DNA from: Pocillopora damicornis | Lineage: Eukaryota | Direction of reading: 5' to 3' | Assembly: GCF_003704095.1 (NCBI RefSeq) | Contig: NW_020846166.1 | Location: 186,001 to 250,000 of the forward strand | DNA: 64,000 nucleotides | Shown: positions 222 to 37,390 of the stretch, in pieces | How positions within the stretch are numbered: position 1 is the first letter of the stretch | Layout: every line of letters begins with the position of its first letter | The notes under the pieces: generated by a model | What the model was told of the DNA's origin: nothing | Database searches by the model: none | What the model saw: only the letters and a program-made list of their open reading frames with translations | Position numbers and translations under genes: made by a program

Positions 222-3200
222 CTTTGCTGTTCTTTGTGTCTCTTAGTTTCGTGTCTATGCCAGCCAACTCAAACTGAGCCATCTCTTGGGAAACAATTTC
301 GATCCCTTTTCCTTTGTTTGCGACAGTTTTTCTCCATTTATAATCCACGTCATCAGTAGTATGAGCATCTGAAATGATAAGTAAATCAGTCAAACGATGA
401 GGCATACTCATTAATTTCTCCAGCATTGCAAATTGTACTATTTCTAGAGTGTGATTGGTTAAGCAAAGAGAAACTGGAGAAAGATAATTACAATTTTAAA
501 AAACGCAAGAGGGAGTCCTCGGTAAATATTTGGACTTCAAACCTCAAATCTCTCGATAGGATTCACCCTAAAAACATTGCGGTGAAGAGGGCTTGTTAGA
601 AGCCTGGCTGTAAAATTATGCTGAGTTCTCAAACGATGTTACTTCTCCGAAATCGAAGTGAATATTCTCTAAAGAAGTAAATTTCAGAAAGAATAGGGCA
701 TTCTTCTGCTTTTTATTCATTTCTCAGTTTGACTGAAAAAAAATTGAAGTAATCTGTAAATAATCTTTGTAATGTTTGCAAAACAAGATCAGACCACTCC
801 AACTTTGATATCGAGTTACAGACGTACTCACAGCTTTCAATGATCAGAGGACAGTGTTGGGTATCCATTGGGTAAAGTCGGAAGTCCATGTCACATTGCG
901 CCGTCAAGGTTATTCTGCAAAGAAAATGGAAACAGATATCACCAAAAGGTATTGAGAATATTTTGTTTGTCATTTTAGTTGCTTTGGCTAATAGAACATT
1001 GCATCTGAGGGCTCAAAATAATTTCTAAGAACATATCACTTTTGGCCTCCGTGAGGTACGTACTGGAGCGGAAGAAATATCCCCTTACATAATTATTCCG
1101 TATGTCGTATTGTAGCTATTATCACAATTTACCCCACTTTACTCTTCAAAAATTCAATAATTATTCAAAATATTTCCTGAAATTAGAAGTACTAGACTAA
1201 ATTACTCCTTCGCTTCCACCAGTTGGAATTTATTCGCCAAAATTTAAGCCTGCCCATCATTATTCTCGTGAATATCATATAGCTTCTAAGGTTCAAGTTT
1301 ACGGACGAAAAACATTTGCATCACCTTGCGCTGAAGTATATTTTCCCTGTGGAGTAAATCATGACTCGCATGTTCTCGCGAGTGACATAATGGTACTTTA
1401 TTCTTTTTACATTAAAGAAATATGTGTCCGGAGTCCAGAAGAGCTTGGAAGGATCTCCTGCCATGTTAAATGGTGTGCTAGAATTATGCCTGAACCTTGG
1501 ATCGTACCACCACTGGCGGAAGAAAATGTCCATCGAATAATCCTGGTTTTTAAAGAAATGAAAGCTAATCAGAAGTCCAAGTAAAATTGGTTTACTACTA
1601 TGGCAATGATGTAGCTATGAGTTGTCGCTAGTAATTGCGTGAACATTGGGTTTGTCAAGGAAAGGTGACTATGATTATTAATAGAAACATCTTTGCATGG
1701 GCTCAGTTGTCACTGCTATACTGGAGTAGAGCACCCTGGGGAATATTCTCTACGCCTAGTTGTATGTCTTCTCCCGATTAACAATGATCTTCAATCTTCA
1801 TTGTAGAATCTCCATAAGGTGTGAGTTGATAGATTTTTAATTTAGATGACTCAGCGTCGGTTGATTGAGTTACTATTCACTTATCTTCACTCTTCGTTGT
1901 CACTCAAAAACTATCTCAGTAAAACAACTGAGGTAGGCTACTGCATGCTATAAAGTGCAATCCCTTGGGACTTGCCATGGAAGACAGCACTCAACAGATA
2001 GTTGAGAGCCTCACACCAAACAAATAAATATAACATCTTTAGTACCATGTTTGCCTCGTTTAGCTCTCCAAAGGAAACAACTTTGATCTCCACGGTGATT
2101 TCAACAGGTTCACCTATTGAAAAGTAAACCAAAGAAAGAATTTGTTATATGAAGTGCACCCTCAAGGAACAATGGATAAATTAAGTGAAGGTGGTTTAGA
2201 ATGTGTCGGGATAGGGATGCTTTGAACAGAAAAGCCTTCCTGTTTTCTACCCGAGAGTATTAGTTAAACAATAGCTCAGAGTTGGTGTCCAAACATTGAC
2301 AGACGGTAGAAATGCATTTGTGAATTCTATGGTTTGGTAAAGGAATGGAAAATCAAGGAACTCTGGTATTATAAATATAAATGCTAACGTTAGCAATTCG
2401 TGCCGTAGCTGATTTGATTGCAGTTAGATGCATTTATGATTTCTTAAGCAGCTTACCTCCGGCATTAGGGCGGAGTTTAGGGTCATAATTGGCTAGTATT
2501 TCATTAATGGTGGAAGATAAATTGGCAGCCTCTTCCTTGCCACGTACCCAGTCTTCATCCTCCTCTAAAGACCTGTTTTATGAGACATCTAATAATTTAA
2601 GATGTAACAAGTATATATCAAAGCACGCGTTATATAAAACATTCTGAACGTAAGTAGATATACTTAGTACCTAATTCTCTAACAGCTGAAGCCAGTGTCT
2701 AGAAAACACGTTGGTTCTTATCGTCAGTGTATTTTATAGTTCTGTGAACATTTTTTGGACAAGTTGCAGGCGTCAGTTGGTAATCTTTAGTGTAAGTAGG
2801 ATTATTATGACATCACTTTAACGCTGTGCTTATGAGGGTTACATAACACCTCTAGCGATAACGGACAGGTGAAATTTCTGTTACAGGAATTACTGATACT
2901 TAAGTTCTAATTATCAGCCAAACATGCTTTCAAAAATGCATCCTCGTAAGACTTTTTAACCATTCATTCCATCCTTAATTAGACCCTCAAACTAGTATGA
3001 TGAAATCTCATCCGGCTTCGAAGAATACCAAATGAAACGGTGTGAACTTCCTGTCATACATTATGCATCGTTAATTGCGGGTAGCTGTTTGTAACTGCTG
3101 TCTTAATCGATTCCTCTAGAATTAATGGCTACTTGTCTCAGTCCAAGGCACTATTTTTTGGTTTGCTGCTTTTAGCTTTTTTCTCATTCTACCAAGTTAC

Positions 3201-8436: not shown

Positions 8437-11400
8437 TTATACAGCTGTTTCCCACACTGTCTCTTCCACTACCTCATCAGAGTTGATCTGAGGATCTGCT
8501 GTTGTTCCTTTAGCTGCTGAGTGGTCATTGTCAACATCTGTTTTGTTTTGCTCTGTGGAATATTAAAAAAATCCTGAACATATACGTGTTCATTGTCAAC
8601 AAGCTTTCTGGGGATTTTTTTGCGTTGCCTTAAATTGGACATGATGCCGCGAGTAAGCCTAACATATTTCAAGAAAACATACTCATAATTACTTTCCCAT
8701 TGCGTAATTAAAATAAAGGGAATGCATGAACATTTTTGGAACCTCAATAATCGAGTGAATGATGGAGATTCTAAAAATTATTTAAACCACACCTTTTCCA
8801 GTAGATTTGTCCTCATCCCCTACAAAATCTGTGTGTGGCTCCTCATATTCGGAATTTGCTGCAATATTTTTCTGTGACTTTTTATGACCTTCAGTCTTTG
8901 TTTCCGTTGGCAGTGCTTCTATTGTTTCAGAAAAATTATTAGGCTCAGTTTCGGGCTTTTCTGGCTTAGCAGTCTCCGCGTATTTTGTGATCAGCTGCTG
9001 TTGGAATTGGAGTTCAGTATGTTCTTCCCCTGGGTGCTCATGTTTGTGAACCTCCTCTTGCTCTTTTTCAGGTTCCTCTTCGGCTTCTTTGGCTGATTCT
9101 GTGTGGAACATGCAAATTTGAGAGATTTGTAAATGTTGTTAGGGAATGTGTGTACTGTTTCTTTCGATGGTAAGTAAACGAGTAAATTAAACAACATTAT
9201 CAAAAGCATAAACTGTCAAAGTTGTACTGGTTCTTCCATGAAATGTATCCCCTCGGTAAGCCAGTAAAGCCAAACATCAGCGGATGTCTATACCTTTTCC
9301 AGCTTGGGTTCGACCACACTTTGTTATAAAGTAGTTGCACAGCTGTTGCCATTTTGCCTTGAGAACGTCTCGAACCTATATTTGAGAGAAAAAGGTTTCC
9401 TTACCTTGAATTAAGAAGTTTCAGTAAATGATAAAACCTAAAATCATGTCAGATCATGTTGGATGGCACTGTCTCATTCTATTGTAATGTGACAGAGCTT
9501 CGCTCCTTTCAACTGATTTCAATTTAAATAAGAGAATGTTTAACTTTTGCTTCACACATTTCACATAATTTGTAGAACTTTCTATTACTTGAAACTTTCA
9601 TACTTTTTTTAAACGATTACACGAGCATATTGTTACGGCATCTAGGGTGATCATTGATGATTTTCTCATAAAATATCAAAACAATGGACATAATGTGCGA
9701 TCCATGATATGTAACACGTATTCTTGGATACATACTTTGTTTAGAACTGTGGAAGATCTTGAGAAATGAATCTTCAATCCTTTTTAATTTCCCCCTTGTT
9801 GGTTTCGTCACTTTTTCATAGAGTTGGTCATTACATGCTGCCCTCTTTTGATTTATATTTAGTTGATGTCTTTTAGTGAAACATAACTTTCGCTAAGCGA
9901 GATGAAATAGAAAAACTTGCTTAAAAGTTAAAAGTTTCATTTACAATTTACGGTTATTTACAAATTTTAAAGTGATAATTACCTGTGTGGTGGACAAGGT
10001 GTATAGGATCGGATTTATGGCAGAGTTGAAGGGAAGAAAAAACACTGCAATCCACACTGCGAGATCTCCTCGTGTCCTGAACGACTTTTCCACGATGGAC
10101 CTGAGTGCAATCACAATGATGGGCATCCAACAGATACAGTCGGTCAGGATGATGAAAAACACACGCTTGGCAAGAGCTGTCTCTCGCTGGGTTTTAGCTG
10201 ACATCGACTGAACCTGACATCTGTTTATAACTATTGTAAGATAGGCCACAATGACAAAGGCAAGAAATGCCAAGTTCAACCCAACAAAGACAGCCACAGA
10301 ATATTCCCAAGCAGGTGCCTTATCATTGGAGAGTTGAAGTGGGAGACAAACAACAGATCTGCCATAGAAGTGACGACCTTTAAAATACTGAATGCTAAAA
10401 GTAGGAAGGAAAGCAATTATGAAACCGATTATCCAGATAGCAAAGCACAATGTATGAGTGGCTTTGTTGGTTAGTCCATTAACACTGAAAGGGAACACAA
10501 TATTTTTAAGCCTGTCAGCAGAGATTAGAGAAAGAAGCATCATTGACACCTCGCTTGACAACACAGCGATTGCACCAGATATCTGGCATGACAAACTCGT
10601 TCGCCAGTTGAAGTCATGTAAGTAGTATTTCCCTGCCCACATCGCATCCTTCCAACCTATAATGATTAGGTAAACACCCATTAAGCCATCAGATACCGCC
10701 AAGTGTATCAACATGATTGACTGTGCAATATTTTCCTCCCTGTAGACCATTCGCCACGTGATGACAAACACAGCTCCAACCAGAGACGTGACACTAATAA
10801 CCCAAACACACTTCCTAGGAGCTCGATTTCTGAACATAGTCTCGCAACTGGCAAAGCGGTCGACGTAGGCAAAGTCGCAATCCGCGTCCACTTTCGTCAA
10901 ATGGCAACACATCAGGCTTGTGTCTACAGTCCTACGGTTCATAGAAAGAGTTCAAATGAATCCCAGAGGAGAAAATGCGCTTAAGAAATGACAGGTACTC
11001 AAAGTGATAAAATATCGAGGGTAAATTCCGATGTGAAAATGAATTCCCATTACTTAACAGTTTCACCGGCAGGGAAATTGGAAAAGTGGGAACAATCAGA
11101 AAGTCTCCATATACGTCAATGGTAGGGGCAGCGAAGTTGTAAGCACTGCATAAGTAGGTGGAGAAGAATGAAAGTTCTAATAAACCGCTTCATCTAGGCA
11201 CTAAGAGTATATTTGAATTGACTAACGTTGTTATTAATTCCTTCATGTTGGAGAAAAAACCTTTTGGTAATTCCCGCATCTCGTTGTAATGAAGGTACCT
11301 GCGCGTTAAAAGAAAGTGATACAGTTTAGCCAGCAATACCCGCTCATGTTCTAATGAAATGATCTCTTCAACCTAATGCATCAGTTACTGGGAGGTCGAC

Positions 11401-17400: not shown

Positions 17401-20400
17401 AGCAACGCATGTTGTGGACAAGATCAAAAGGAAAGAACAATGTTACGCACTCTGGTTATTGTAGGCATAACTTGTAGCTTGAGAGGAAACAAACATACAA
17501 TGTAACATACTCGACGGAACAAGTTTCAAAACGACATGCATGGGGCAATTTTATTGTAATGTAGGGTTGACACTGCGGCACTCTTATCCCTCTCAATGGC
17601 TACCACTTTCCTGTAACATGCTTTCCATAGTTCAAGGTGCTCCAAGGTGAATTATTTGCTCCTCAAGAAAGGGGAGTCAAATCTCATTCCAAAAGCTACT
17701 GTTGCAAAAATGTTCCTCTTTTTGTATGTGTACAGCCCCAAACTAGTTACCAATAGGATTTCTGCCTCCGTAAAAATATATGATTAACAAATATTCACCG
17801 AAAAGGAGGTGATTCGTGGTGAATATTTACCTCGCCGCTTTGCGGTCAGGAAATATAAACCACTTTTACAAGCACTGATCAAAAATGAAATTGCTGACGC
17901 GCGATTTTGTCTCTTCGGCTCCTCTGAGGTGAATATTTCTTGCTAATCACTTTCGAAGCAGCCAATCAGGGCGGACACAACTCAAAGCACTTCGACTTCA
18001 GTTTGACATGTTTTTGAAGTCAAGAACTTTCCGTAGTGCACGTTAAAAATCCATTTCCCGGGGCGGTTACAAAAAGTTCATGGGAAGGTACCGTATTTTA
18101 GTGCAAAAAAACGAACTTACTAGACCTTACAACCGCTTGGCCGTGGAAGTCTGGGTACGTGACTAGTGAAGGCAATAATGGGGTACGATTAGCCCACAAT
18201 ATCTCTTAATCAAGCGCGGTGATCTATCATTTTAACTGTAGTTTTTGAAGTAGAAACTGGTAAGGAACATTTATCGAAACTATAACTTTGTTTCTGAGGA
18301 ATCACCTGAAATGGAACGAAAATGACAAGATAAAGAAATTGCTTGAACACTGTTGAGGGAAAAAGTAAACATGTTGGAATGTTTTTGATAAATTCATTTA
18401 AACTGGCCGGTACCGCAGTTTTTCTGTTCGTTTGTTGAAAACAACCTCCACTCATATCTAATCAGTGGATTAAAAACAAACCAAAAAGCCGGGAACTATT
18501 TTGTGTTCTTAAATTCGAGCACATCTGGGAAATTCTTTGATCGTTATATCTAAGAAACTTAACTTAATTCATTAGTTTCCTCCAGATCAGGTTGTTTGTA
18601 AACTACGTACTTACAGTTTTACTGTAGCTCTCGGAATGTTCTGTGGAACTGATGTTAGCCGTTTTCTTTCACAATCAACATGTATGCCCTTCATGTTACC
18701 TTTCAGAACTGTGCATCGACATGGTTCAGGACAGCCTAGAAAAAAATGATAGGATATTGACTAATTTTGATGTTTGGACACGTCACCTAAATGAGCTCCA
18801 GAATGCTTTTTTTTAATTAAGAGTTCGCTCTGGTTATGAAAATTTTGCAGTCGAGTTATTAATGAATATGAAAGGCTTTTTGTTCGGCTGCCTTTTTGAC
18901 TTGTAGTCAAGTTATTTATGAACTTCCGCGCTGATTTCATCTTGCAGTAAAATAATTGTTGGGGTTTATTTCGGGTTGCGACTTGTTGTCTCGATCAGAT
19001 GAATTTTTTATATCTTCTATGGTTTGAGCTCTTAGATTGATAAAATAATTTGCGAGTCTATTCGGTAGAGCTTTGAATTGCTTTTGTAAACAAAGTTAAT
19101 TGGTTTCATGAACTAGAGAAATTTTTAGTTGGGCATCATCTACAATTCTAGTAAATGGTAAGGTAATGAAGCTATTATCCAAATTTACGTGTACCTTAGC
19201 CTCCCTTGGAGTAAAATGGTAACTTGACAGACTTACTCTCGAAAACGAGACTGATATATTTCCTCTTCAACTGACCATGGCTTTCCACCTCGCAGCTGTA
19301 GTTTGTATTCCTTTCTTCATTAGTAACGTTGATTAGAAGTCGAACACTCGTGCTATTTTGCACAACAGCGCCATTCTTTCTCCACACAATGCGAGGAGCC
19401 GGTCCACCTTCCGCCGGGCACCACAAAGATGACGAATGGTTGAGCAGGACAAACTGAGTCTGTGCGTCTTGACTCAGACCTGCAGGAACTAGAACAAATT
19501 CAAAAGGATTTGTGATTTCCGCTAAATCATGAAAGCAGGACACATATAAAAACAGAACGCTCAATGACCTACCTTTTTTATTTGCTGCTCTTCCCTCATA
19601 GTAATTATGGTAAAATAACCAGTATCTGCCCGATGATGAAAATCTTAACCACATGTAATGTCCGCTGGATCGGCGGATTAAAGACTTAATGTATCTTCCA
19701 CAAAATACACCTAATAGATTGGCAGACTGATTATAACCATCGCGAATCTCAAGATATTCGTTATCAGCACAAGGTACTCCCGAAAAATAGGAAGGCAGCA
19801 TAAATGACAATGTTATTTCAACATATTCGCCTCTTGCCACTGGAGGTTGGGTTTTTTCAAGGTATAGGATATACTGTTTAGAGCGTACTTTTGTTATTAT
19901 TGCAACTGAAATATATAACATACCTATGTTAAGGAATACTTGTGTACACATAGACACGTGATTAACTGGAATTTGTTATATCTTCCAAACTCAAATACGC
20001 TTTCCGATTGGAGGAGAACTTGTCACTTGCCATGGGTCAAAACTCACTAGTTCCTTAAAGAAACTTCGACTCGCGTGGGATCAGATAGTGTATCTTGAGA
20101 CCTTGTCAAGTTTTCATGGCAACACGCAAGAAGAAAAGAGTTTTTGGCAGTCATTGCTCCAATATTGAGAGTATAACCAAACTGACAAAACGCTCGACCA
20201 CACGCTCCATATAGGGTTTTGGGGAAACAAAACTTACTGAAAAAGGCTACCAAAAAAGGCTAATTCATACGACGCATTTTGATCTTTTGCAAAAGCTTGC
20301 GTAGAAGATGAGGACTGCAATTAACCACACTTTTTTGCAAAAAAGTAGTCGTCCAAATCCTCCTCGAGTGATCTTAATATATTATATATGTTATTGTGTT

Positions 20401-25800: not shown

Positions 25801-26541
25801 TCGTCTCGGCTTTCGTTCCGCCGACTTAAAGGAGGAGGAAAATAAAAATAATAAAAATAATGATAAAAACAAACGAACAAAAACAACAACAACCGTGTAT
25901 GAAAAAGGGAAAATCTTACTGGTGTGATTTGATAATACACGCAGATGCATATCATCTTTTATTTCCCTATTACTTGCAGTTTCCGGAGAGAAGCTGGAAC
26001 CCGTTAAATACAGAAAATTGTCGTGCGGTCTGCGTTACTTTCTTTGGCCAAGCTGCTCAGACCCTAGCTCCTTGCAACAGAAGGTCTGTGGAAGCGACAA
26101 TAAAACCTATGCATCGTTTTGTGCCTTCAAAGTCGCCCGGTGCTATGCCAAAAAAGACTACAATACCAAATTAACTCTTCAATACAAGGGGGAGTGTGGA
26201 AAACCAGAATCACCCAGAATGACCTTAACGAAGGATAGTCGGAGAAATGGACCGTTTGGTTGCCCGATTTTAAGAAAGTGCGACGAGTTTAAAGGTGATC
26301 TCTCATGTGGCAGCGATGGACGGATTTATATGAATGATTGTCACTTGAATTATACGAAGTGCCGGGGGAAGAAATTCCTGAAGCCCATGCCTTTAGGTAA
26401 GCAAACTACTATCCATTCTATCCATACTAAAATCCATTCGTTAGAGGACCAATATCATAGGACAAAATACTTCTAGTTTTCCATTTCACCGAGTTCTGAA
26501 CGTGAATACATGACCCATCTTGGCCGCATGCGTTTATAATG

Positions 26542-28497: not shown

Positions 28498-30579
28498 CTT
28501 ACGATGACAATGATAGTAAAACATTTATGAAGCGCATTCCCCATATAAATATGTTCTGATGCGCTTTACAACTCTTCGGTTGGGGACTTTGGCTAGACGG
28601 CATTCTGCAGTTTACAATTTTTGAAAGGGAATTTTGCAAATATACCGTCTAACCGTTTGCAGATGTCTTTGCAAAGGCAGCTCATTTTCAGATATTTCAA
28701 GACCCTGAGTGTTGTTCCGTTCTGAGCTCGAGCCATCGATTTTTTGCACGGCAGTACGGCGCTCTACAATCAGAGCTCACCAGGTACCGCTTTCCCAAAT
28801 TCGAACAGAAGAAGCAACAAAACAAAAATAACACTTCAACCTCATCTTGGACAATTCACACCAACAAGAGTAAATTTAGATCCCTTGTAAGACCCATACA
28901 TTAAAACTGATGAGAAAACCTGATGTTGGCAATTTTTACGACGATACATGCATGTATTAGGAAGCAAGTTCTTAATCTCGCAAATACCCATACGCTTCTT
29001 TCTTCTTCTTCTTTAAGATGAAACGGCCACAGCATTAAACTTTATTATGACGGATTACCACATAGGACATGAGTCATAAGGAGTTAAAAATCTCTTGAAA
29101 AAACTGACTTTGATTGCTGACATGATTTCCTAGAAAGTAGGCAGAAGCGTTTCGATTTTGCACTGTACATTCGCTATAGCCACATTTCGCTTTGTTGAGT
29201 TGTTAACTAACAAGCAAGATTTTAAAACCATTCAATTTTCCTGTGTCCTTTCAGCGGTCAAACGCCTGGCACGTGCGAACATTTAAACAGCTGTTTGTCC
29301 TTAGAGGCGGCCTGGCTTTCGAGCGAAACAACTTTTGGCACAAACCAGTCTGCCACAGTCTTATAACAGTCTACAACTTTTTTGATGAAGCTAAAAAAAA
29401 GTAAATCAAAAGAATACCTGTTGAGAAATAAACGTTCCACGTTTTCCTTAAGTTGGTTGCCTTTCGTATGTTTCTATGAACACTTTAATTCATTATCGAA
29501 TATTTTGCTTGACAGCGGGTTATATTTTTCTTGAAAATTTTGAGCGGGAAATTGCGCGCGGCCGGGCAAAATTGACCCATGTGCGCATGCCCCAAGTTTG
29601 ACCGCAGTGTTTGGATGCGACAGTTAAGTTAAAAGGTTTTTTCTGTTTTGACAGTGGTAAATATGTTTTCAATTCATTCCAGCTTTCTCACGGAAACTGC
29701 TGCAATTTTAGAAATTCACATAATTGTTTTTTATCATTGTTATTTAATTATTTAAAACAATATTTACAAATTTCAGTTATAACATTACTAACATAACTTG
29801 CAAGACTAACACAATTTTCAAAGCTCAAATATGGGTTTTTATAACAAGATATGATATTTTTGCTACTAGCTGCTGTAGTCAGAATGTGTGATTGACGCAA
29901 GTGTTATTGTAAATTTGTTTCAGGTTTTTGTCAAAACTCCAGAAAATTCCTACCTGTTACATCGTGCCCCAGATATTGTCCGACCAGTTCTCGACCCGTG
30001 TGTGGTGCGAATCGTAAAACGTATGAAAGTATCTGTCATTTAGACAGAGTCATTTGTGCATTGCGGAAGGAAAACAATGCTTCTCTCGCTCTGTATTTCT
30101 TTGGAGCATGCAATTCACCGGCCACACAAGAGCCTTGCCCGAAATTGGAAGAGTGCAAATCTGCGCCGAAGAAACCCGTGTGTGGGTCCAATGGAAAAAC
30201 GTACTCAAGTTTATGTCACTTACGTGCCGCAATGTGTCTCGGGAAGAGGCCAAAAGATCAGAGAGCGTGCCATGCCGCTTGCACATTGCTAAATAATCCC
30301 AAGAAATCTCCTGGAAAGAGCCCACAAGAATTAAAGGCGTGCATTGACACTTGTGCATTGCAAAATGCCGATGAGAACCTTAATTTGCATTATTTTGGAG
30401 AATGCAACGCCCCTATTAACCTAAAGCCTTGCCCAAGTAGGCAGGAATGCCGCATACATGGGCCGAGAAAACCCGTATGTGGTTCGAATAGAAGAACATA
30501 TCGGAACTTGTGTATTTTTCGTGCATCATCGTGTCGCAAGACGAAGCCACTTAAGATTTTATATGAAGAGATTTGTTAA
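24565..30579 (+). CDS. Secreted multi-Kazal-domain protein (5 Kazal-type domains, serine protease inhibitor-like), 374 aa
   Basis: Exons 24565-24616 (signal MRKVFSLLCLTAVLHLS), 25980-26396 and 29924-30579, joined by phase-1 GT-AG introns. Five CG(S/A)(D/N)xxxY...C motifs: CGSDNKTY, CGSDGRIY, CGANRKTY, CGSNGKTY, CGSNRRTY. AATAAA follows the stop. Confidence 0.92.
25487..25735 (+). repeat. Interspersed repeat family (core GATTGGTxCxGAAAAxTCGCGCCACTTTCTC...AAAACCAATCGCGAC); other copies at about 46385-46678 and 58130-58385
   Basis: Three clearly similar copies in the window. Confidence 0.75.
29252..29611 (+). mobile_element. MITE-like element, copy 1 (TIR CAGCGGTCAAAC...GTTTGACCGCAG)
   Basis: Terminal inverted repeats; similar to 32011-32423 in the opposite orientation. 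Confidence 0.7.
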
Positions 30580-32547: not shown

Positions 32548-32915
32548 GAGTTTAAGAAACAACGACGGCGACGGCGACGCCGTGGACAACGTCGGTTAAA
32601 AAAATGAACTTATATTTGACATACGAATCTCGCGATACTCGAAAGTCATTAAGTTTGTTTCTCGCGGTCAAAACTATCTCGAAACTGAACATGGAACACA
32701 GCGTTAAATTAGACATGGGAATCTAAAAAATTAGGCGTCGCCGTTCACGTTCTCCAGAAAACGCAAAGTTTAGTCATTTCACGATTTTGTTTTGCAGAGA
32801 ACGCAAAGAAATTTACAAAGCTTTACAACACACGTGTACAGCCTTTGTCCTGCTCATGAAACCTTTTGTTTAGTGACGTTCCCGTTACCATTGTCGTTGT
32901 GGTTTTTTTTAAACT
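32548..32915. mobile_element. MITE-like element just downstream of the HisC stop codon
   Basis: TIRs GAGTTTAAGAAACAACGACGGC... / ...GTCGTTGTGGTTTTTTTAAACTC. Confidence 0.65.
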
Positions 32916-32994
32916 CAACTTATCTTTTCTGAGTAGAACTGGCACTAGAATGAACTAAAATGAAAGAGAAAATGCACACAAATTTTATGATGAT

Positions 32995-35900
32995 TCAGAC
33001 CGAACCATTTGGAGCCTCATCCAGCTCTGCTATGGTTTTCTTCAAGGTTTTAAGCAATTCGTCATTTTCCTCTGAGGTCCCAACGGTAATTCTGACACAA
33101 TCTTTGCAGTGGACTTTAGATCCTTGATAGCGAATCACAACACCTTTCTCTGAGGCCATTTTCTTGTAGATTTCATAGGCGTGGTCTATCCTCAGAAAAA
33201 CGAAGTTGCTATCTGATGGAAAAATCTACAAAAAAAGACATGAAAGGAAAAATTAAATCACTTTATGCATCAGTCAGTTCATGGTCGAATATCTGGTTCG
33301 TTAAGCTTTTCACATATTTCAATCCTATCTGTCATTTGTGACCGTAAACTTGGAACTGCACCATGTGAAACCAGAAAACCCATGGGACCTTGCCTGTTCC
33401 AAGCGCTCAGTCAGTAGTAAACAGCGTAATGCAACTCTTGATTGTTAAGCAAATTCTCCTTGCCAGCACCTTGTATAGAGAGTAGTATGGAGAATATGCA
33501 TGATGATGTTAGGGTGTAAGGAGTTAAGAATCTAAATGAAATACAGACATACAGCTGTAGATGTGTTCACTTAATGTTGATGGTATGTATTTGGTTTAGA
33601 TAATTCAATAGTCCATTTCACAGTTGTGTGCTTGATTGCCAAGCCTTTGAATAGGAGTGAGGCTAAGGTTGACCTTGTTAATGATACAAACCTTCCTGCT
33701 TTTCAAATGAAAATTACTTTGTTATCATGCTAACTAGATACAGGTCTCTATCACAGCAAGGTCACCTTCAGCCTCACTCCAAATCAAAGGCTTGGCAACT
33801 AAGTACACAACTGTAAAATGACCAATTAGGTTACATGCACTTGTAACAACCACACCAATTACCTTTCTCACTGTTGGAATTTTTTCCAGCTCTTCAATAA
33901 TCCTTTCTTTCTGTTCAGCAATGCTCTTCACATTAGCCTCCATAAGGTGTACGTTATCTAGTGCTTTGTGAGCTACAGAAGCAGTGAGTTTGCTGATGTT
34001 ATAAGGAAATTTCACTTTGTTGAATATTGCGATGATGTCTTCATGAGCAATGGCCATCCCAAACCTTAAAAGAGAAAAGGAGTAGTGAATTTTTTTGTCT
34101 AATCAAACTCTCCAACCTTAAAAAAAAACTGTGTCAGAATCAGGTAATCTGAATCCTTCAAAACTTTGCAACATTTGACAAACAGGTTCTGCTAAAATGC
34201 ACCATTTAGTTTCTCCTTCGTCTGTTAGTGGCTTGAGTGGAGAAAAAGCCCTCACATGGTATTTCAAAATCTAAGGTGGGATATTAACATCAAAATAAAT
34301 TCTGTAGATTTTTTGTGATAAAAATCTCACCTTATTCCTGCCAAACCAAATGCCTTGGAAAAAGTCTGCAGAATTACTAAGCGAGGATATTTGTCGAGAA
34401 GATAACACAGACTACCACAAGTGCTGAAATCAACATATGCTTCATCAATCACCACTATTCCTTCAAATCTCTCAAGAAGTGCAATAATTCTGTCAGTTGC
34501 CAGAGTGTTGCCTGTTGGGTTGTTTGGGGAACATAAAAAAATCACATGGGTTTGTGGAGTTACTGCATCTACAACCTAAAAAAAATAACGGCCAGAGGTT
34601 AAGTTTATCATCTGTGGCTCAATGTGAAGCTCAGTTAGAACTAGGGCCCAACTGGCATTTGGGAAACATGTCATCAAAGCCTTACCCAGCATCCCCTTTA
34701 CTCCAAAGATCTTATCAGTAATTCTCCTTACTATCTACCATGCAACCCTCATCGTGTTATTTCAGAGAATTTGGTATTGGATCAACTGATCATGATAATC
34801 CCCTAATATATATTTTAATTTATTCAAATCACTTGTCTGCTTGATATTGTATTGAGACTTTAAGGAAGGAAATTGTGTTTTGGTCACTCATGAGAATAAA
34901 AGGGTTAATTTTATTTCTCTGAAATTTCTCCACCGATAGCACTCAACCTGTTATGGTATCATTCATTCATTTGTACGGGAACAATCAAAGGTAATAATAA
35001 AAATGAAACCAGAACTTGGAAAATGAAAAATGAACTGAGAACAATAACAACAACAAAATATTTCAAATAAGTAACTTCCCACTTTTTCAGCCTGAGAGTG
35101 AAAAAGTGAGAGTTTCTGATTACCATCATGTAAACTGAAGTTAAGACTAAATTGCATATATAAATATATACCTCATCAACTGGCAAATGGAACTCTTCTG
35201 TCAGAGGAACTGAAATGACTTGCACATTGTTTATGTCAGCCACAACCTGCGAAAAGGTCTGCTCGTCAACAATCAAGCAACATATGTTTTCATGTCTCAT
35301 GATGAAACAAAATTTAATTAAATTTATTACAAAGTTCTCAGTTTACATAATCCTCAACAGTAGGGCAACAGTAAACGTTTGCAGAAGGAGACAGTAGGAG
35401 AACTGGGCTCTAATTAAGGGTGCTATAATCATTGTGTTTCATCCTTGGACAAGACACTTTACACTCACAGCGTCTCTCTCTCCCTATCCCCCTCTCCATC
35501 CAGGAGGAAAAAAGAGTACTAGTTATTAATATCAGCTACAGTTGGGGGGAAGGGAGGAAGGAGTTAAGGGGGAGGGGGGGAAAGTAGAGGGGAGAGATAG
35601 GAGCCTAACCTGTAATGAACTACCTACCAGTAGCATCCTTCTTGCTAGAGATACTAGGATAAGTTCTGGTAGTATGGGCAGGGCTGTCAACAAGCTTGAA
35701 AGTTGAGGAAGCATAAGAAATACTAGACCAACATGTTATCTTGGTTGCCATGTTGTTTTGACAGAAACACACAAGGCAAGGAACTGAGAACTATCAACTT
35801 CTAATGTTCCTGGTGATCATCAAAAACTTTGTACAAAACCTTTGCACAAATTCTGAATTTATAATTGACTCATACACTTTAACCTAGCTGTTACTGGTAA

Positions 35901-37308
35901 ACTAAAATGAGATGATTTTTAACTAGCACTTATAATAGAATAAAGAGAAAGAAGCTGCGCTAAAAATGACAGATTAGCCAGCAGTTTTGGCTGGCTACCC
36001 GGCAGCTCTTGAGTATGTACCACTTAGCCTGAGTGCTTACTCTTACTACTTTACTGGAAAGGGGAAACTTTTCAAGAGGTTCCTGCAAAAGTTTTTTCAA
36101 TCTTACCTTATACATTCCATATGTAGGTGGGGTGATCAATAGACTTCCCTCACCAGGGGTACAGAATACCCTTACCACCATATCAATTGCTTCATCACTA
36201 CCCACTCCAAGATATATCTGCTCTTTCCTCACCCCCCTGTACTTTGCTATTTTCTCCTTCAAATCAAAGTTGTAGGGGGAGGGGTAACGATTCATGTCAC
36301 CTTCCATTGGAATGCATGATCCATATGAACATTCATTGGCATCCAGGAGAATGCCTGGTATCAGAAAAACAAGGAATGATTTTTGATTAATTCATGTGAT
36401 AGTTAAAGAACATTTTATGTTTTTCTGCCATTTTTATCTTATGAATCATAAGTAAACTGTACTCCTAGCTCACTCTTTTCAGACAAATTTTCATTAGAAA
36501 TAAAATATTGAAAAATGAAAAAAAAAGAAGAGGAAAATGGCTCTAACTCTATAACTCCAACGAGTGATCAAGAGATAATTTATCGTTAAACTGTAAATGC
36601 AAATCATTGGTGCTACAGTTTCATGTAATCTCTATTTAGCTTAACATTCATTTTCTTTCTTCGGATAAGATTTTAATGTAAAATGAGGTTTTAATTTTAA
36701 TTTCTAACTACAACTACATAAAAATAAGGAAACTCTGAATAACTGACTGATCATTTACTGTTCGGAAGAGGATATAAGTCATATAGCTCGTGCAAATGGA
36801 GTGTATTGCGTTACAAGGCGTTACTATTGTAAGGACATCTTCTGTACTCAGTCGTATTGTAAATATACTTTCCTAGGTGAAAGTAAAATGACTAATCACG
36901 AGGATGGCATGGTGAATAAATTACCTTGATTGAGTTGAAACGAAAAGGAGTCACTTGATCTATGAATACTTTACAGGGGGCAGCCATTGATCAATGACGA
37001 TGAAATTGTTTCAAATCTTATCTCCCTCGACAACCGGCAAAAAAAATAAAAACGAGAAGTTTAAAAACCGACGAGTTTAAATGTGCATTTTTCGATCGAA
37101 GCTCAGAGTTCCTGTCTCGCATAACGGTCTCGTAGGTGCATTGTTCTTCATTAGCACAACGTGGTTTGCTCATCTAACAATACTATTTTTAAAATCAGAT
37201 TAAAAGAGAGTTACCGTTATCGTAATCATCCCTTGCACATCTGTAAGGAATCAACTTCAGTATATTTGGTCTCACCAGATTTTGCAAATCAAGCTGTAAA
37301 TGACTCAT
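32995..37308 (-). CDS. hisC: Histidinol-phosphate aminotransferase (PLP-dependent class I/II aminotransferase; fungal His5-like), 364 aa, 6 exons
   Basis: Exons 37308-37215 (LVRPNILKLIPYRCARDDY), 36354-36107 (GILLDANE, NRYP, GVGSDEAID, PPTYGMY), 35246-35172, 34575-34331 (FLCSPNNPTGN, DEAYVDF, TFSKAFGLAGIR with the PLP lysine), 34064-33863 (KVKFPYNIS) and 33225-32995 (SNFVF, VRITVGT). Total 1095 nt, open to TGA, all GT-AG. Confidence 0.95.
33609..33826. mobile_element. Foldback/MITE with long (about 80 bp) imperfect inverted arms in HisC intron 5
   Basis: CATTTCACAGTTGTGTGCTTGATTGCCAAGCCTTTGA... pairs with ...TCAAAGGCTTGGCAACTAAGTACACAACTGTAAAATG. Confidence 0.8.
34692..34908. mobile_element. 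TTAA-CCCTTT...AAAGGG-TTAA (piggyBac-like ends) non-autonomous element family; related copies at about 33440-33527, 40638-40830, 44201-44285, 53810-53987 and 63917-64000
   Basis: Shared termini and internal motifs (CTAATTTCTCC, CCTGAATCAAA, GGTCACGAGAA) recur across the window. Confidence 0.6.
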
Positions 37309-37390
37309 GGTTGGTTTGTTGCTCTTAAGCTCAGTAGGCTACCATCCGCTGAGTCCACAATCTTTTACAGCGGTGTTCACATTAAACAAA
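37309..37390. promoter_or_regulatory. Very short bidirectional promoter/5'UTR interval between hisC and EXOC4
   Basis: Divergent ATGs at 37308 (-) and 37391 (+). A YY1-like CAAAATGGCG overlaps the EXOC4 start. Confidence 0.7.

What the first reader, a model, noticed from the sequence alone, without database searches (positions are those of the whole stretch)
32995..37308. Intact, intron-containing histidine-biosynthesis gene (HisC/His5) in an animal genome
Seen: a complete 364-aa ORF in 6 GT-AG exons with the full HisC motif set (DANE, NRYP, GSDE, SPNNPTG, DEAY, TFSKxxGLAGxR, RITVG). Its introns hold the same repeat families as the neighbouring animal genes, and it abuts EXOC4, so it is not contamination. 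The N-terminus LVRPNILKLIPYRCARDDY closely resembles yeast His5 (IVRPKIYNLEPYRCARDDF). Established: histidine is essential for nearly all animals, but a fungal-like de novo His pathway has been reported in robust-clade corals. Inference: this is one step of that retained pathway, which matters for host autonomy from symbionts. It is unusual for Metazoa but probably not new.
Basis: partly seen in the sequence, partly recalled or inferred. Interest (0 to 1): 0.75.

Follow-up and report, generated by a model that had tools for sequence, protein, structure and literature searches.

The report
Coral host histidine-synthesis gene HisC
This is a real, spliced and expressed coral gene for one enzyme of histidine synthesis, a pathway most animals lack, but the pathway was already described for this group of corals in 2018.

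Summary
A six-exon, GT-AG, minus-strand gene at 32995-37308 encodes 364 aa. All five introns are confirmed by spliced polyA-RNA contigs from four studies.

Each exon long enough to score hits the hisC equivalog TIGR01141 best and in order. A natural 364-aa database protein, P0162, is 97-100% identical to every exon. It scores 359.9 bits against a cut-off of 276.55. The active-site residues of E. coli HisC are kept.

The gene lies among animal genes and carries a host MITE in intron 5, so it is not contamination. All six other pathway genes are in the same genome. The assembly matches Pocillopora damicornis in size, a robust coral.

Ying et al. 2018 (PMC6214176) already described this pathway in robust corals, so the finding is confirmed rather than new. 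The scan had already confirmed HIS4 and HIS7 on other DNA of this genome.

One nuance: this enzyme was not shown to be fungal-like. Its nearest relatives are HisC of sponges, unicellular holozoans, ochrophyte algae and Balneolales bacteria. The spliced model was searched exon by exon only.

The parts
37215..37308 (-). Exon 1 (CDS start ATG at 37308-37306; 31 codons + 1 nt). Encodes the N-terminal arm, including the PY...ARDDY stretch.
   Evidence: frame, GT donor; junction 36354|37215 in 2 of 4 runs; 100% identical to P0162 residues 1-31.
36107..36354 (-). Exon 2 (248 nt), with the DANE, NRYP and GSDE motifs.
   Evidence: TIGR01141 positions 23-110, 72.5 bits. E. coli-type HisC 7szp/1fg3, E about 1e-15; both junctions; 99% identical to P0162.
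35172..35246 (-). Exon 3 (75 nt, 25 codons).
   Evidence: AG/GT; junctions in 4 of 4 runs; 100% identical to P0162. Too short for a family hit.
34331..34575 (-). Exon 4 (245 nt), with SPNNPTG, DEAY and the PLP-lysine motif TFSKAFGLAGI.
   Evidence: TIGR01141 positions 139-217, 103.3 bits; aligned to E. coli HisC 148-221, K214 included; junctions in 4 of 4 runs.
33863..34064 (-). Exon 5 (202 nt). Its first base completes the Arg codon that follows the PLP motif.
   Evidence: TIGR01141 positions 220-284, 51.3 bits; junctions in 4 of 4 runs; 97% identical to P0162.
32995..33225 (-). Exon 6 coding part (76 codons + TGA at 32997-32995), with the RITVG motif.
   Evidence: TIGR01141 positions 285-348, 55.6 bits.; 100% identical to P0162.
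37309..37349 (-). 5' UTR, at least this far.
   Evidence: X1 contig record 1 ends at 37349 with 0 differences.
32900..32994 (-). 3' UTR. It runs on below 32900, the end of the stretch that was laid.
   Evidence: the X1 contig has 45 more letters beyond 32900, and the X15 contig has 327 more.
33607..33827 (.). Palindromic MITE-like dispersed repeat inside intron 5. It marks the locus as host genomic DNA.
   Evidence: 71-nt arms, 83% complementary; 39 other places at 92-95% identity among 40 scored of 527 candidates; very high summed RNA-contig depth with many loose ends.
37350..37390 (.). Short divergent interval between the known 5' end of HisC and the start codon of the plus-strand neighbour. 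It is presumably a shared bidirectional promoter or overlapping 5' ends.
   Evidence: That it acts as a promoter is inference; no transcription start was mapped, because contigs cannot show starts.
37391..37438 (+). First coding exon of the head-to-head neighbour (probably EXOC4), spliced 37438|37512.
   Evidence: ATG, GT at 37439, AG at 37510-37511; the X1 loose end at 37438 continues with the letters that stand at 37512 onward; an EXOC4 exon lies further down the same strand.

Best explanation
The locus is a nuclear gene of the coral host, most likely Pocillopora damicornis or a very close relative. It encodes histidinol-phosphate aminotransferase (HisC, yeast His5, EC 2.6.1.9).

The enzyme is a PLP-dependent, fold-type I aminotransferase. 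It transfers the amino group of glutamate to imidazole-acetol phosphate, giving L-histidinol phosphate. This is step 7 of de novo histidine synthesis.

It works with six other host genes scattered over other scaffolds:
- ATP-PRT (His1)
- the PRA-CH/PRA-PH/HisD fusion (His4)
- eukaryote-type HisA (His6)
- the HisH-HisF fusion (His7)
- IGPD (His3)
- the PHP-type histidinol phosphatase (His2)

The gene was inherited vertically from the unicellular ancestors of animals. It was kept in robust corals and lost in most other animals.

Shown here: gene structure, splicing, expression, family membership, conserved active-site residues, host location, presence of the other six genes, and phylogenetic position. 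Inferred: enzymatic activity, flux through the pathway, and the physiological benefit of independence from symbionts or diet for histidine.
For: Gene model: six GT-AG exons, 364 codons.

Splicing and expression: all five introns removed in polyA-RNA contigs of four studies, and one contig spans all exons with 0 differences.

Family:
- PF00155 in 4 of 6 exon pieces.
- TIGR01141 hisC is the best family in the same 4 of 6, collinear at 23-110, 139-217, 220-284 and 285-348. The other two exons are 31 and 25 aa and score nothing.
- The natural protein P0162 is 100/99/100/100/97/100% identical to exons 1-6. It scores 359.9 bits on TIGR01141 (cut-off 276.55) over positions 1-348 of 349.
- P0162 matches E. 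coli HisC 1fg3 at E=1.9e-67.

Active site: Y20, Y55, Y110, N157, D184, Y187, S213, K214, R222, Y243, R322 and R335 (E. coli numbering) are invariant in alignment A2.

Constraint: 9 synonymous against 5 non-synonymous among 14 exonic differences in RNA contigs. The protein is 86% identical to that of Oculina.

Host location:
- The neighbours are a 7TM receptor, a Cys-loop channel, a CUB/Ig gene, a Kazal gene and an EXOC4 exon.
- A host MITE sits in intron 5.
- Intron repeats are shared with 5 other loci of the genome.
- Exon GC is 0.41 against 0.37 for the window.

Pathway in the same genome:
- IGPD: 216 bits in one ORF.
- PRA-CH, PRA-PH and HisD: nine collinear pieces on one strand of C2740.
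- HisH-HisF: a 388-aa first ORF plus two more pieces on C130.
- hisA_euk: four pieces on C538.
- hisJ-family phosphatase on C2969.
- HisG: 6 of 10 small ORF pieces hit collinearly on C1472.

Phylogeny:
- The corals fall in a starred clade (96/83) of 20 rows that holds every eukaryote-labelled row and no named bacterium.
- Corals plus sponges as one clade gives a tree 1.82 log-likelihood units better than the free search (p-AU 0.579).
- The nine holozoan rows as one clade are not rejected (p-AU 0.364).

Literature: the same pathway, with introns in all genes but IGPD and genes scattered over scaffolds, is reported for robust corals (PMC6214176). HisP aminotransferases occur in choanoflagellates (preprint 10.1101/2024.03.19.585368, passage).
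Against: No enzyme activity or complementation was tested, and none is in the 2018 paper, which says function could not be directly demonstrated.

The other six genes were detected as collinear domain pieces only. Their reading frames were not checked exon by exon, and I did not test their expression. HisG was missed entirely by Pfam PF01634 (0 matches). It rests on weak exon hits (E from 3.7e-5 to 0.09), with 3 of 10 pieces unmatched and 1 matching only an unrelated family. hisA_euk positions 175-232 were not found.

The first intron junction is seen in only 2 of 4 runs.

HisC enzymes also show aromatic aminotransferase activity, so another role cannot be excluded.

Balneolales bacteria are as similar (53-55%) as sponge and holozoan proteins (53-58%). 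The animal grouping within the eukaryote clade has weak support (82/61). The groups tested were named after the tree had been seen. No fungal, choanoflagellate or complex-coral sequence was in the tree.

The species name rests on assembly size and on the nearest named protein, not on a marker gene.
Confidence: 0.85

Rival explanations
1. The gene is a genuine host aminotransferase, but its main role is not histidine synthesis. It might be an aromatic or other amino-acid transaminase kept for a different pathway, with the histidine pathway incomplete or silent in this species.
For: HisP aminotransferases of Arabidopsis and E. coli show aromatic aminotransferase activity in vitro (preprint passage). 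I did not verify the intactness or expression of the six partner genes. HisG evidence is weak per exon. In PMC6214176, single pathway genes (K04486, K01663) persist in lineages without the pathway and are suggested to serve other metabolism.
Against: All seven genes are detectable in one genome. The positions that I recall as binding the substrate phosphate in E. coli HisC (Y20, R322, R335) are invariant. The best family model by far is the hisC equivalog, at 359.9 bits against 224.8 for the next. Earlier agents of this scan reported HIS4 and HIS7 of this genome as spliced and expressed (not checked by me).
Confidence: 0.08
2. Coral HisC was acquired by horizontal transfer from a Balneolales/Bacteroidota-like bacterium into the robust-coral lineage and later gained introns. 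It was not inherited from the animal ancestor.
For: The best SwissProt matches of coral HisC in PMC6214176 Table 3 are Flavobacterium and Cytophaga. Named Balneolales, Balneola, Rhodohalobacter and Gracilimonas proteins are 53-55% identical. The eukaryote clade sits among Balneolales-type bacteria in the tree. The main text of the 2018 paper reports synteny-based loss evidence for five pathway genes (K00765, K01663, K01814, K14152, K04486), with K00817 not among them.
Against: The corals group with sponges, Capsaspora, Sphaeroforma, Syssomonas (Colp-12) and algae in a 96/83 clade that holds no named bacterium. Animal and holozoan monophyly are not rejected. The gene has five spliceosomal introns and host-like composition. 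If a bacterium-eukaryote transfer occurred, it looks far older than corals.
Confidence: 0.05
3. The stretch is contamination, or a mis-assembly of symbiont, fungal or bacterial DNA into the coral scaffold.
For: Histidine-pathway genes in the Nematostella assembly were judged bacterial contamination by the 2018 paper.
Against: The five GT-AG introns are removed in polyA RNA. A host MITE with at least 39 other copies lies inside intron 5. Animal genes flank the gene on both sides of the same scaffold. Orthologues at 86-91% identity exist in Stylophora and Oculina, the latter on a 46.5-Mb chromosome. The nearest bacterial proteins are only about 55% identical.
Confidence: 0.01

Closest known systems
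Histidinol-phosphate aminotransferase (K00817) of the robust-coral histidine pathway (Ying et al. 2018, Genome Biol 19:175, PMC6214176)
   Same: It is the same enzyme and the same pathway of seven gene products. The genes are scattered over scaffolds, and all have introns except IGPD, as seen here. The pathway was already noted in Stylophora, of the same family, whose protein is 91% identical in exon 4.
   Different: Pocillopora is not mentioned in that paper (0 occurrences). 'Histidine' does not occur in the P. damicornis genome paper (0 occurrences). This is therefore at most a further species. The main text of the 2018 paper shows no tree and no synteny for K00817; its supplements were not opened.
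E. coli HisC (PDB 1fg3 and related entries)
   Same: 36% identity over the whole length, E=1.9e-67. The PLP lysine and the other active-site residues are conserved.
   Different: The E. coli gene is intronless and sits in an operon. It is the outgroup on a very long branch in the tree.
HisC-like genes of sponges (Sycon ciliatum, Corticium candelabrum) and unicellular holozoans (Capsaspora, Sphaeroforma, Syssomonas Colp-12)
   Same: 53-58% identity over 93-98% of the length. The four of these five that were scanned (Sphaeroforma was not) pass the hisC cut-off: 334, 346.7 and 355.6 bits, against 359.9 for the coral protein. They share one clade with the corals and have an N-terminal motif of the same type.
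   Different: They are other lineages. It was not tested whether they carry the rest of the pathway. Amphimedon, a demosponge, is stated not to encode histidine biosynthetic enzymes (preprint passage).
Fungal His5 (S. cerevisiae HIS5)
   Same: The same reaction in a pathway of the same gene architecture: the His4 fusion, the His7 fusion and the PHP-type His2.
   Different: No fungal protein is among the 120 best full-length hits or the 49 N-terminal hits. The relationship to fungal His5 could not be measured here.

Membership tests
HisC / histidinol-phosphate transaminase (NCBIfam TIGR01141 equivalog) | Whole-protein score above the curated cut-off (276.55 bits), with the model covered end to end | tested here: met
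   Exon pieces score 72.5 + 103.3 + 51.3 + 55.6 bits, collinear. This is a rough sum of 282.8 and leaves out exons 1 and 3. The natural protein P0162, 97-100% identical to each exon, scores 359.9 bits over positions 1-348 of 349. The joined model itself was not scored.
HisC / histidinol-phosphate transaminase (NCBIfam TIGR01141 equivalog) | Class I/II aminotransferase domain (PF00155) | tested here: met
   PF00155 is found in 4 of 6 exon pieces, covering profile positions 31-105, 146-225, 229-293 and 299-361. The best solved relatives are all HisC entries. No 3D model was made.
HisC / histidinol-phosphate transaminase (NCBIfam TIGR01141 equivalog) | PLP-binding lysine and the active-site residues of E. 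coli HisC | tested here: met
   K214, S213, D184, Y187, N157, Y55, R222, Y20, Y110, Y243, R322 and R335 are invariant in A2. K214 is aligned in exon 4. The roles of these residues are recalled from the E. coli structure papers, which were not read here.
HisC / histidinol-phosphate transaminase (NCBIfam TIGR01141 equivalog) | Catalyses imidazole-acetol phosphate + glutamate to histidinol phosphate + 2-oxoglutarate | not testable with these tools
   Needs an enzyme assay or complementation.
Robust-coral de novo histidine pathway (PMC6214176) | All seven gene products are encoded in the host genome | tested here: met
   HisC is in the window. IGPD is on C3883. The His4-type fusion is on C2740. 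HisH-HisF is on C130. hisA_euk is on C538. The hisJ-family phosphatase is on C2969. HisG is on C1472, with weak collinear exon hits. Detection is at domain level only; full reading frames were not verified.
Robust-coral de novo histidine pathway (PMC6214176) | The host is a robust-clade scleractinian | tested here: inconclusive
   The nearest named protein is from Stylophora pistillata, at 91% in exon 4. Oculina and Desmophyllum follow. The assembly has 234.35 Mb, against 234 Mb for the P. damicornis assembly. No marker gene or record name was seen. That these genera belong to the robust clade is recalled, except for Stylophora.
Robust-coral de novo histidine pathway (PMC6214176) | The genes have introns (except IGPD) and are scattered over scaffolds | tested here: met
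   HisC has 5 introns. The IGPD domain lies in a single 210-aa open frame. The other genes match in several pieces. The seven genes are on seven different contigs.
Fungal-type His5 | Closest relatives are fungal His5 proteins | tested here: inconclusive
   Fungal names: 0 of 120 in the full-length search and 0 of 49 in the search of residues 1-60. Only 120 of 7995 hits are listed, and no fungal sequence could be put in the tree, so the distance to fungi was not measured.

The most novel reading that the evidence does not exclude
Coral HisC is not a fungal-like oddity confined to robust corals. It belongs to a holozoan line of HisC genes that also survives in a calcareous sponge (Sycon ciliatum), a homoscleromorph sponge (Corticium candelabrum) and unicellular relatives of animals. 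On this reading the last common ancestor of animals still had the gene. Histidine auxotrophy then arose by many independent losses inside animals, not once on the animal stem. Robust corals would not be 'unique amongst animals'. If those sponges also hold the other six genes, de novo histidine synthesis is more widespread among early-branching animals than is in print. Three searches of the held library found no paper linking these sponges with the pathway (listings only).
Probability: 0.4. Interest if true: 0.55.

Novelty: already known. Interest (0 to 1): 0.3.

Why it matters
Histidine is essential for nearly all animals. A host-encoded pathway would make robust corals independent of their algae, bacteria or prey for this amino acid, which bears on coral nutrition under bleaching and on symbiont choice. 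That argument was made in 2018.

This check adds four things:
- The gene is present, intact, spliced and expressed in a pocilloporid genome.
- All seven pathway genes are there.
- The HisC step is of holozoan type, shared with sponges, rather than demonstrably fungal.
- The animal-stem 'loss of histidine synthesis' stated in comparative papers (PMC6040629, passage) is too simple for this gene.

Tried and rejected
- Pfam HisG (PF01634) on the own genome found nothing. The gene was then found through HisG_C and TIGR00070 and by reading the frames. Six-frame family scans can miss genes cut into very small exons.
- The second-best TIGR01141 match in the genome (C3290, 82 bits) is an intronless 443-aa aspartate-aminotransferase-like ORF, not a second HisC. 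The third match (C517, 38.8 bits) was not examined.
- The genome-contig scan with P0162 gave only 2 irrelevant loci, 39% identity over 38 residues. Its patterns were too specific, so no named bacterial loci entered the tree.
- A search restricted to residues 1-60 of P0162 was meant to fish out fungal His5. It collected only 52 candidates, none with a fungal name.
- EXOC4: four other putative exon pieces gave nothing in Pfam at E<=0.01. Three of them (39017, 41348, 55405) were also tried in PDB, without a relevant hit. Only the piece at 53484 is confirmed.
- Intron repeats against the rest of the window gave 0 hits at E<=1e-5 and 1 weak hit at word size 7.
- I considered a 3D model and fold search and dropped them as unnecessary, given E=1.9e-67 to E. 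coli HisC.
- I considered the ESM Atlas for the sponge question and did not use it, because its description excludes known families and taxonomy.
- I did not ask for the supplements of PMC6214176 (Tables S18-S24, Figs S10-S12). They may hold K00817 synteny, residue checks and transcript evidence that bear on the HGT rival.

Full report
**What is there**

On the minus strand between 32995 and 37308 lie six open stretches joined by canonical GT..AG sites:
- E1 37308-37215
- E2 36354-36107
- E3 35246-35172
- E4 34575-34331
- E5 34064-33863
- E6 33225-32995

The lengths are 94 + 248 + 75 + 245 + 202 + 231 = 1095 nt, that is 364 codons plus TGA.

**Splicing and expression**

Twenty-two public runs hold part of the stretch. 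Twelve are on record as RNA and come from several of the nine studies. They hold 0.22-0.32 of the sampled words, which is about the exonic share of the 4.6-kb stretch.

I laid contigs of four polyA RNA runs from four studies. Four intron junctions appear in 4 of 4 runs and the first junction in 2 of 4, all with CT..AC on the plus strand. One 1276-nt contig covers all six exons from 32900 to 37349 without a single difference. This gives a 5' UTR of at least 41 nt.

In run X15 the contig departs from the window just upstream of exon 2. I did not resolve this; it may be a diverged first exon in a related lineage.

Among 14 exonic differences seen in the contigs, 9 are synonymous and 5 are not. 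This fits purifying selection.

**Family**

- PF00155 matches 4 of 6 exon pieces.
- The hisC equivalog TIGR01141 is the best NCBIfam model for the same four, in collinear order. Exons 1 and 3, at 31 and 25 aa, are too short to score.
- Exons 2 and 4 find E. coli-type HisC structures best. The PLP lysine in exon 4 is aligned with K214.
- The exhaustive search with exon 4 found one close relative only, a 213-aa Stylophora pistillata RefSeq protein at 91% identity.
- Searching with that protein returned P0162, a 364-aa protein from public assemblies. It is 100/99/100/100/97/100% identical to the six exons and has the predicted residues at both split codons. I used it as a natural stand-in for the full-length protein.
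- P0162 scores 359.9 bits on TIGR01141 (cut-off 276.55) and matches E. coli HisC at E=1.9e-67.
- The residues I recall as the PLP and substrate contacts of E. coli HisC are invariant in the alignment with E. coli, Sycon, Capsaspora, a Balneolales bacterium and Heterosigma.

**Host, not contaminant**

The same scaffold carries a rhodopsin-type receptor, a Cys-loop channel, a CUB/Ig gene and Kazal genes, and an exon matching human-type EXOC4.

Intron 5 holds a palindromic element of about 220 bp. It has 39 further copies at 92-95% identity among only 40 scored of 527 candidates in this genome. Other intron repeats recur in five other loci of the genome.

The gene is head to head with a plus-strand gene whose start codon is at 37391. 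That gene is probably EXOC4, but this was shown only for an exon 16 kb downstream.

**The rest of the pathway**

All six partner genes are in the same 234-Mb assembly, each on a different contig:
- IGPD lies in a single open frame.
- PRA-CH, PRA-PH and histidinol dehydrogenase lie in nine collinear pieces on one strand, the His4-type fusion.
- The HisH-HisF fusion is present.
- Eukaryote-type HisA is present.
- A hisJ-family PHP phosphatase is present.
- ATP-PRT is present in many tiny exons. The Pfam model missed it. TIGR00070 and HisG_C hit 6 of 10 hand-picked pieces in order.

This is detection at domain level. I did not verify each reading frame. Earlier agents of this scan had confirmed the HIS4 and HIS7 genes of this genome as expressed and already published.

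**Which organism**

The assembly size is 234.35 Mb in 4393 contigs. The published Pocillopora damicornis assembly has 234 Mb (PMC6208414, passages). The nearest named protein is from Stylophora, of the same family. I saw no record name, so the species is a strong inference, not a reading.

**What is known**

Ying et al. 2018 (PMC6214176; abstract, section 9 part 1 and passages read) reported a complete histidine pathway in robust corals (Fungia, Goniastrea, Stylophora). It includes histidinol-phosphate aminotransferase, has introns in all genes but IGPD, and has genes scattered over scaffolds. This matches what I see.

They call the pathway fungal-like. Yet their Table 3 lists Flavobacterium and Cytophaga as the best SwissProt matches for HisC. 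The main text shows trees only for ATP-PRT and IGPD, and does not list K00817 among the genes with synteny evidence. I did not open their supplements.

**Where this HisC comes from**

The 120 best full-length relatives of P0162 are 52-58% identical once the three coral proteins at the top are set aside. They mix two groups:
- Ten proteins with a eukaryote name or source. These are Oculina (a coral, 86%), Sycon ciliatum, Corticium candelabrum, Capsaspora, Sphaeroforma, the EukProt entry Colp12 (which is Syssomonas multiformis), one further EukProt entry, Heterosigma, Pseudopedinella and one further MMETSP entry.
- Nine proteins with a bacterial name, mostly Balneolales and their kin.

No hit has a fungal name.

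I built a 51-row maximum-likelihood tree rooted on E. coli HisC. All rows labelled as eukaryote fall in one starred clade (96/83), together with seven unnamed rows that sit among the algae. No named bacterium is in that clade. It lies among Balneolales-type bacteria and apart from Bacteroidia/Cytophagia.

Corals plus the two sponges plus Syssomonas group weakly (82/61). Holding corals and sponges together gives a slightly better tree than the free search (p-AU 0.579). Holding the nine holozoan rows together is not rejected (p-AU 0.364).

The groups were named after the tree was seen. Fungi, choanoflagellates and complex corals are absent from the tree. The result therefore favours vertical descent within holozoans and disfavours a coral-specific bacterial transfer, but it does not prove either.

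**Verdict**

The finding is ordinary in the sense of being already published for this coral clade.

The side result is worth a follow-up. Calcareous and homoscleromorph sponges carry an apparently intact orthologue. A demosponge is said to have no histidine biosynthetic enzymes, and comparative papers state that the pathway was lost from animals altogether (PMC6040629, passage).

Noticed in passing
Proteins P0329 (Sycon ciliatum, 396 aa, on a 98-Mb contig) and P0342 (Corticium candelabrum, 376 aa, on an 8.6-Mb contig): Two sponges carry RefSeq-annotated HisC-like genes that are 54-58% identical to the coral protein. Both pass the hisC cut-off and group with the corals. This is at odds with the claims that histidine-pathway genes are unique to robust corals among animals, or lost from all animals. 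Three paper searches listed no report of it.
   Followed up: partly
window 37309-37390: HisC and the plus-strand neighbour (ATG at 37391, probably EXOC4) are head to head. Only about 41 bp separate the known HisC 5' end (37349) from the neighbour's start codon, so they likely share a bidirectional promoter or have overlapping 5' ends.
   Followed up: partly
window 33607-33827 (intron 5): A palindromic MITE-like element with 71-nt arms, 83% complementary. It has hundreds of candidate copies in the genome (527 at first look; 39 of the 40 scored are other copies at 92-95% identity). It is hugely represented in polyA-RNA contigs.
   Followed up: partly
P0001 = XP_022804768.1 (Stylophora pistillata, 213 aa): The Stylophora RefSeq model looks truncated. 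It starts near exon 3. After the exon-5 end it continues with residues that resemble a read-through of the intron, as in the window's open frame at 33737-34102, instead of exon 6.
   Followed up: partly
window about 36356 (upstream edge of exon 2), run X15: In one polyA RNA run the spliced contig continues upstream of exon 2 with 27 letters unlike this window. The same contig differs from the window at several exonic sites, so it may come from a related Pocillopora lineage with a diverged or alternative first exon.
   Followed up: no
G000:C1472 about 144.6-149.5 kb (L025:3614-8473): The ATP-phosphoribosyltransferase (HisG) gene is cut into about ten very small exons. It gave no match at all to Pfam PF01634 in the six-frame genome search. 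This is a warning that 'absent' from such scans can be false for intron-rich genes.
   Followed up: yes
G000:C3290:93475-94806 (L002:1366-2697): An intronless 443-aa class I/II aminotransferase ORF. Its best model is archaeal-type aspartate aminotransferase at 181.6 bits, far below that model's cut-off. Its origin (host intronless gene or foreign) was not examined.
   Followed up: partly
Proteins P0006, P0007, P0011 (554-596 aa) and P0037 (793 aa): Among the nearest exon-4 relatives are unnamed metagenomic proteins much longer than HisC. The HisC part is at the N-terminus, or in P0037 at the C-terminus, so these are presumably fusions with another domain.
   Followed up: no
window 716-1614 (-), 9944-10951 (-), 19199-19975 (-), 25928-26473 (+), 29896-30576 (+): The neighbouring animal genes are a Cys-loop ligand-gated channel, a rhodopsin-type 7TM receptor in one 336-aa frame, a CUB+Ig gene, and a Kazal-repeat ORF at 29896-30576. 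The ORF at 25928-26473 looks Kazal-like by eye and was not scanned.
   Followed up: partly
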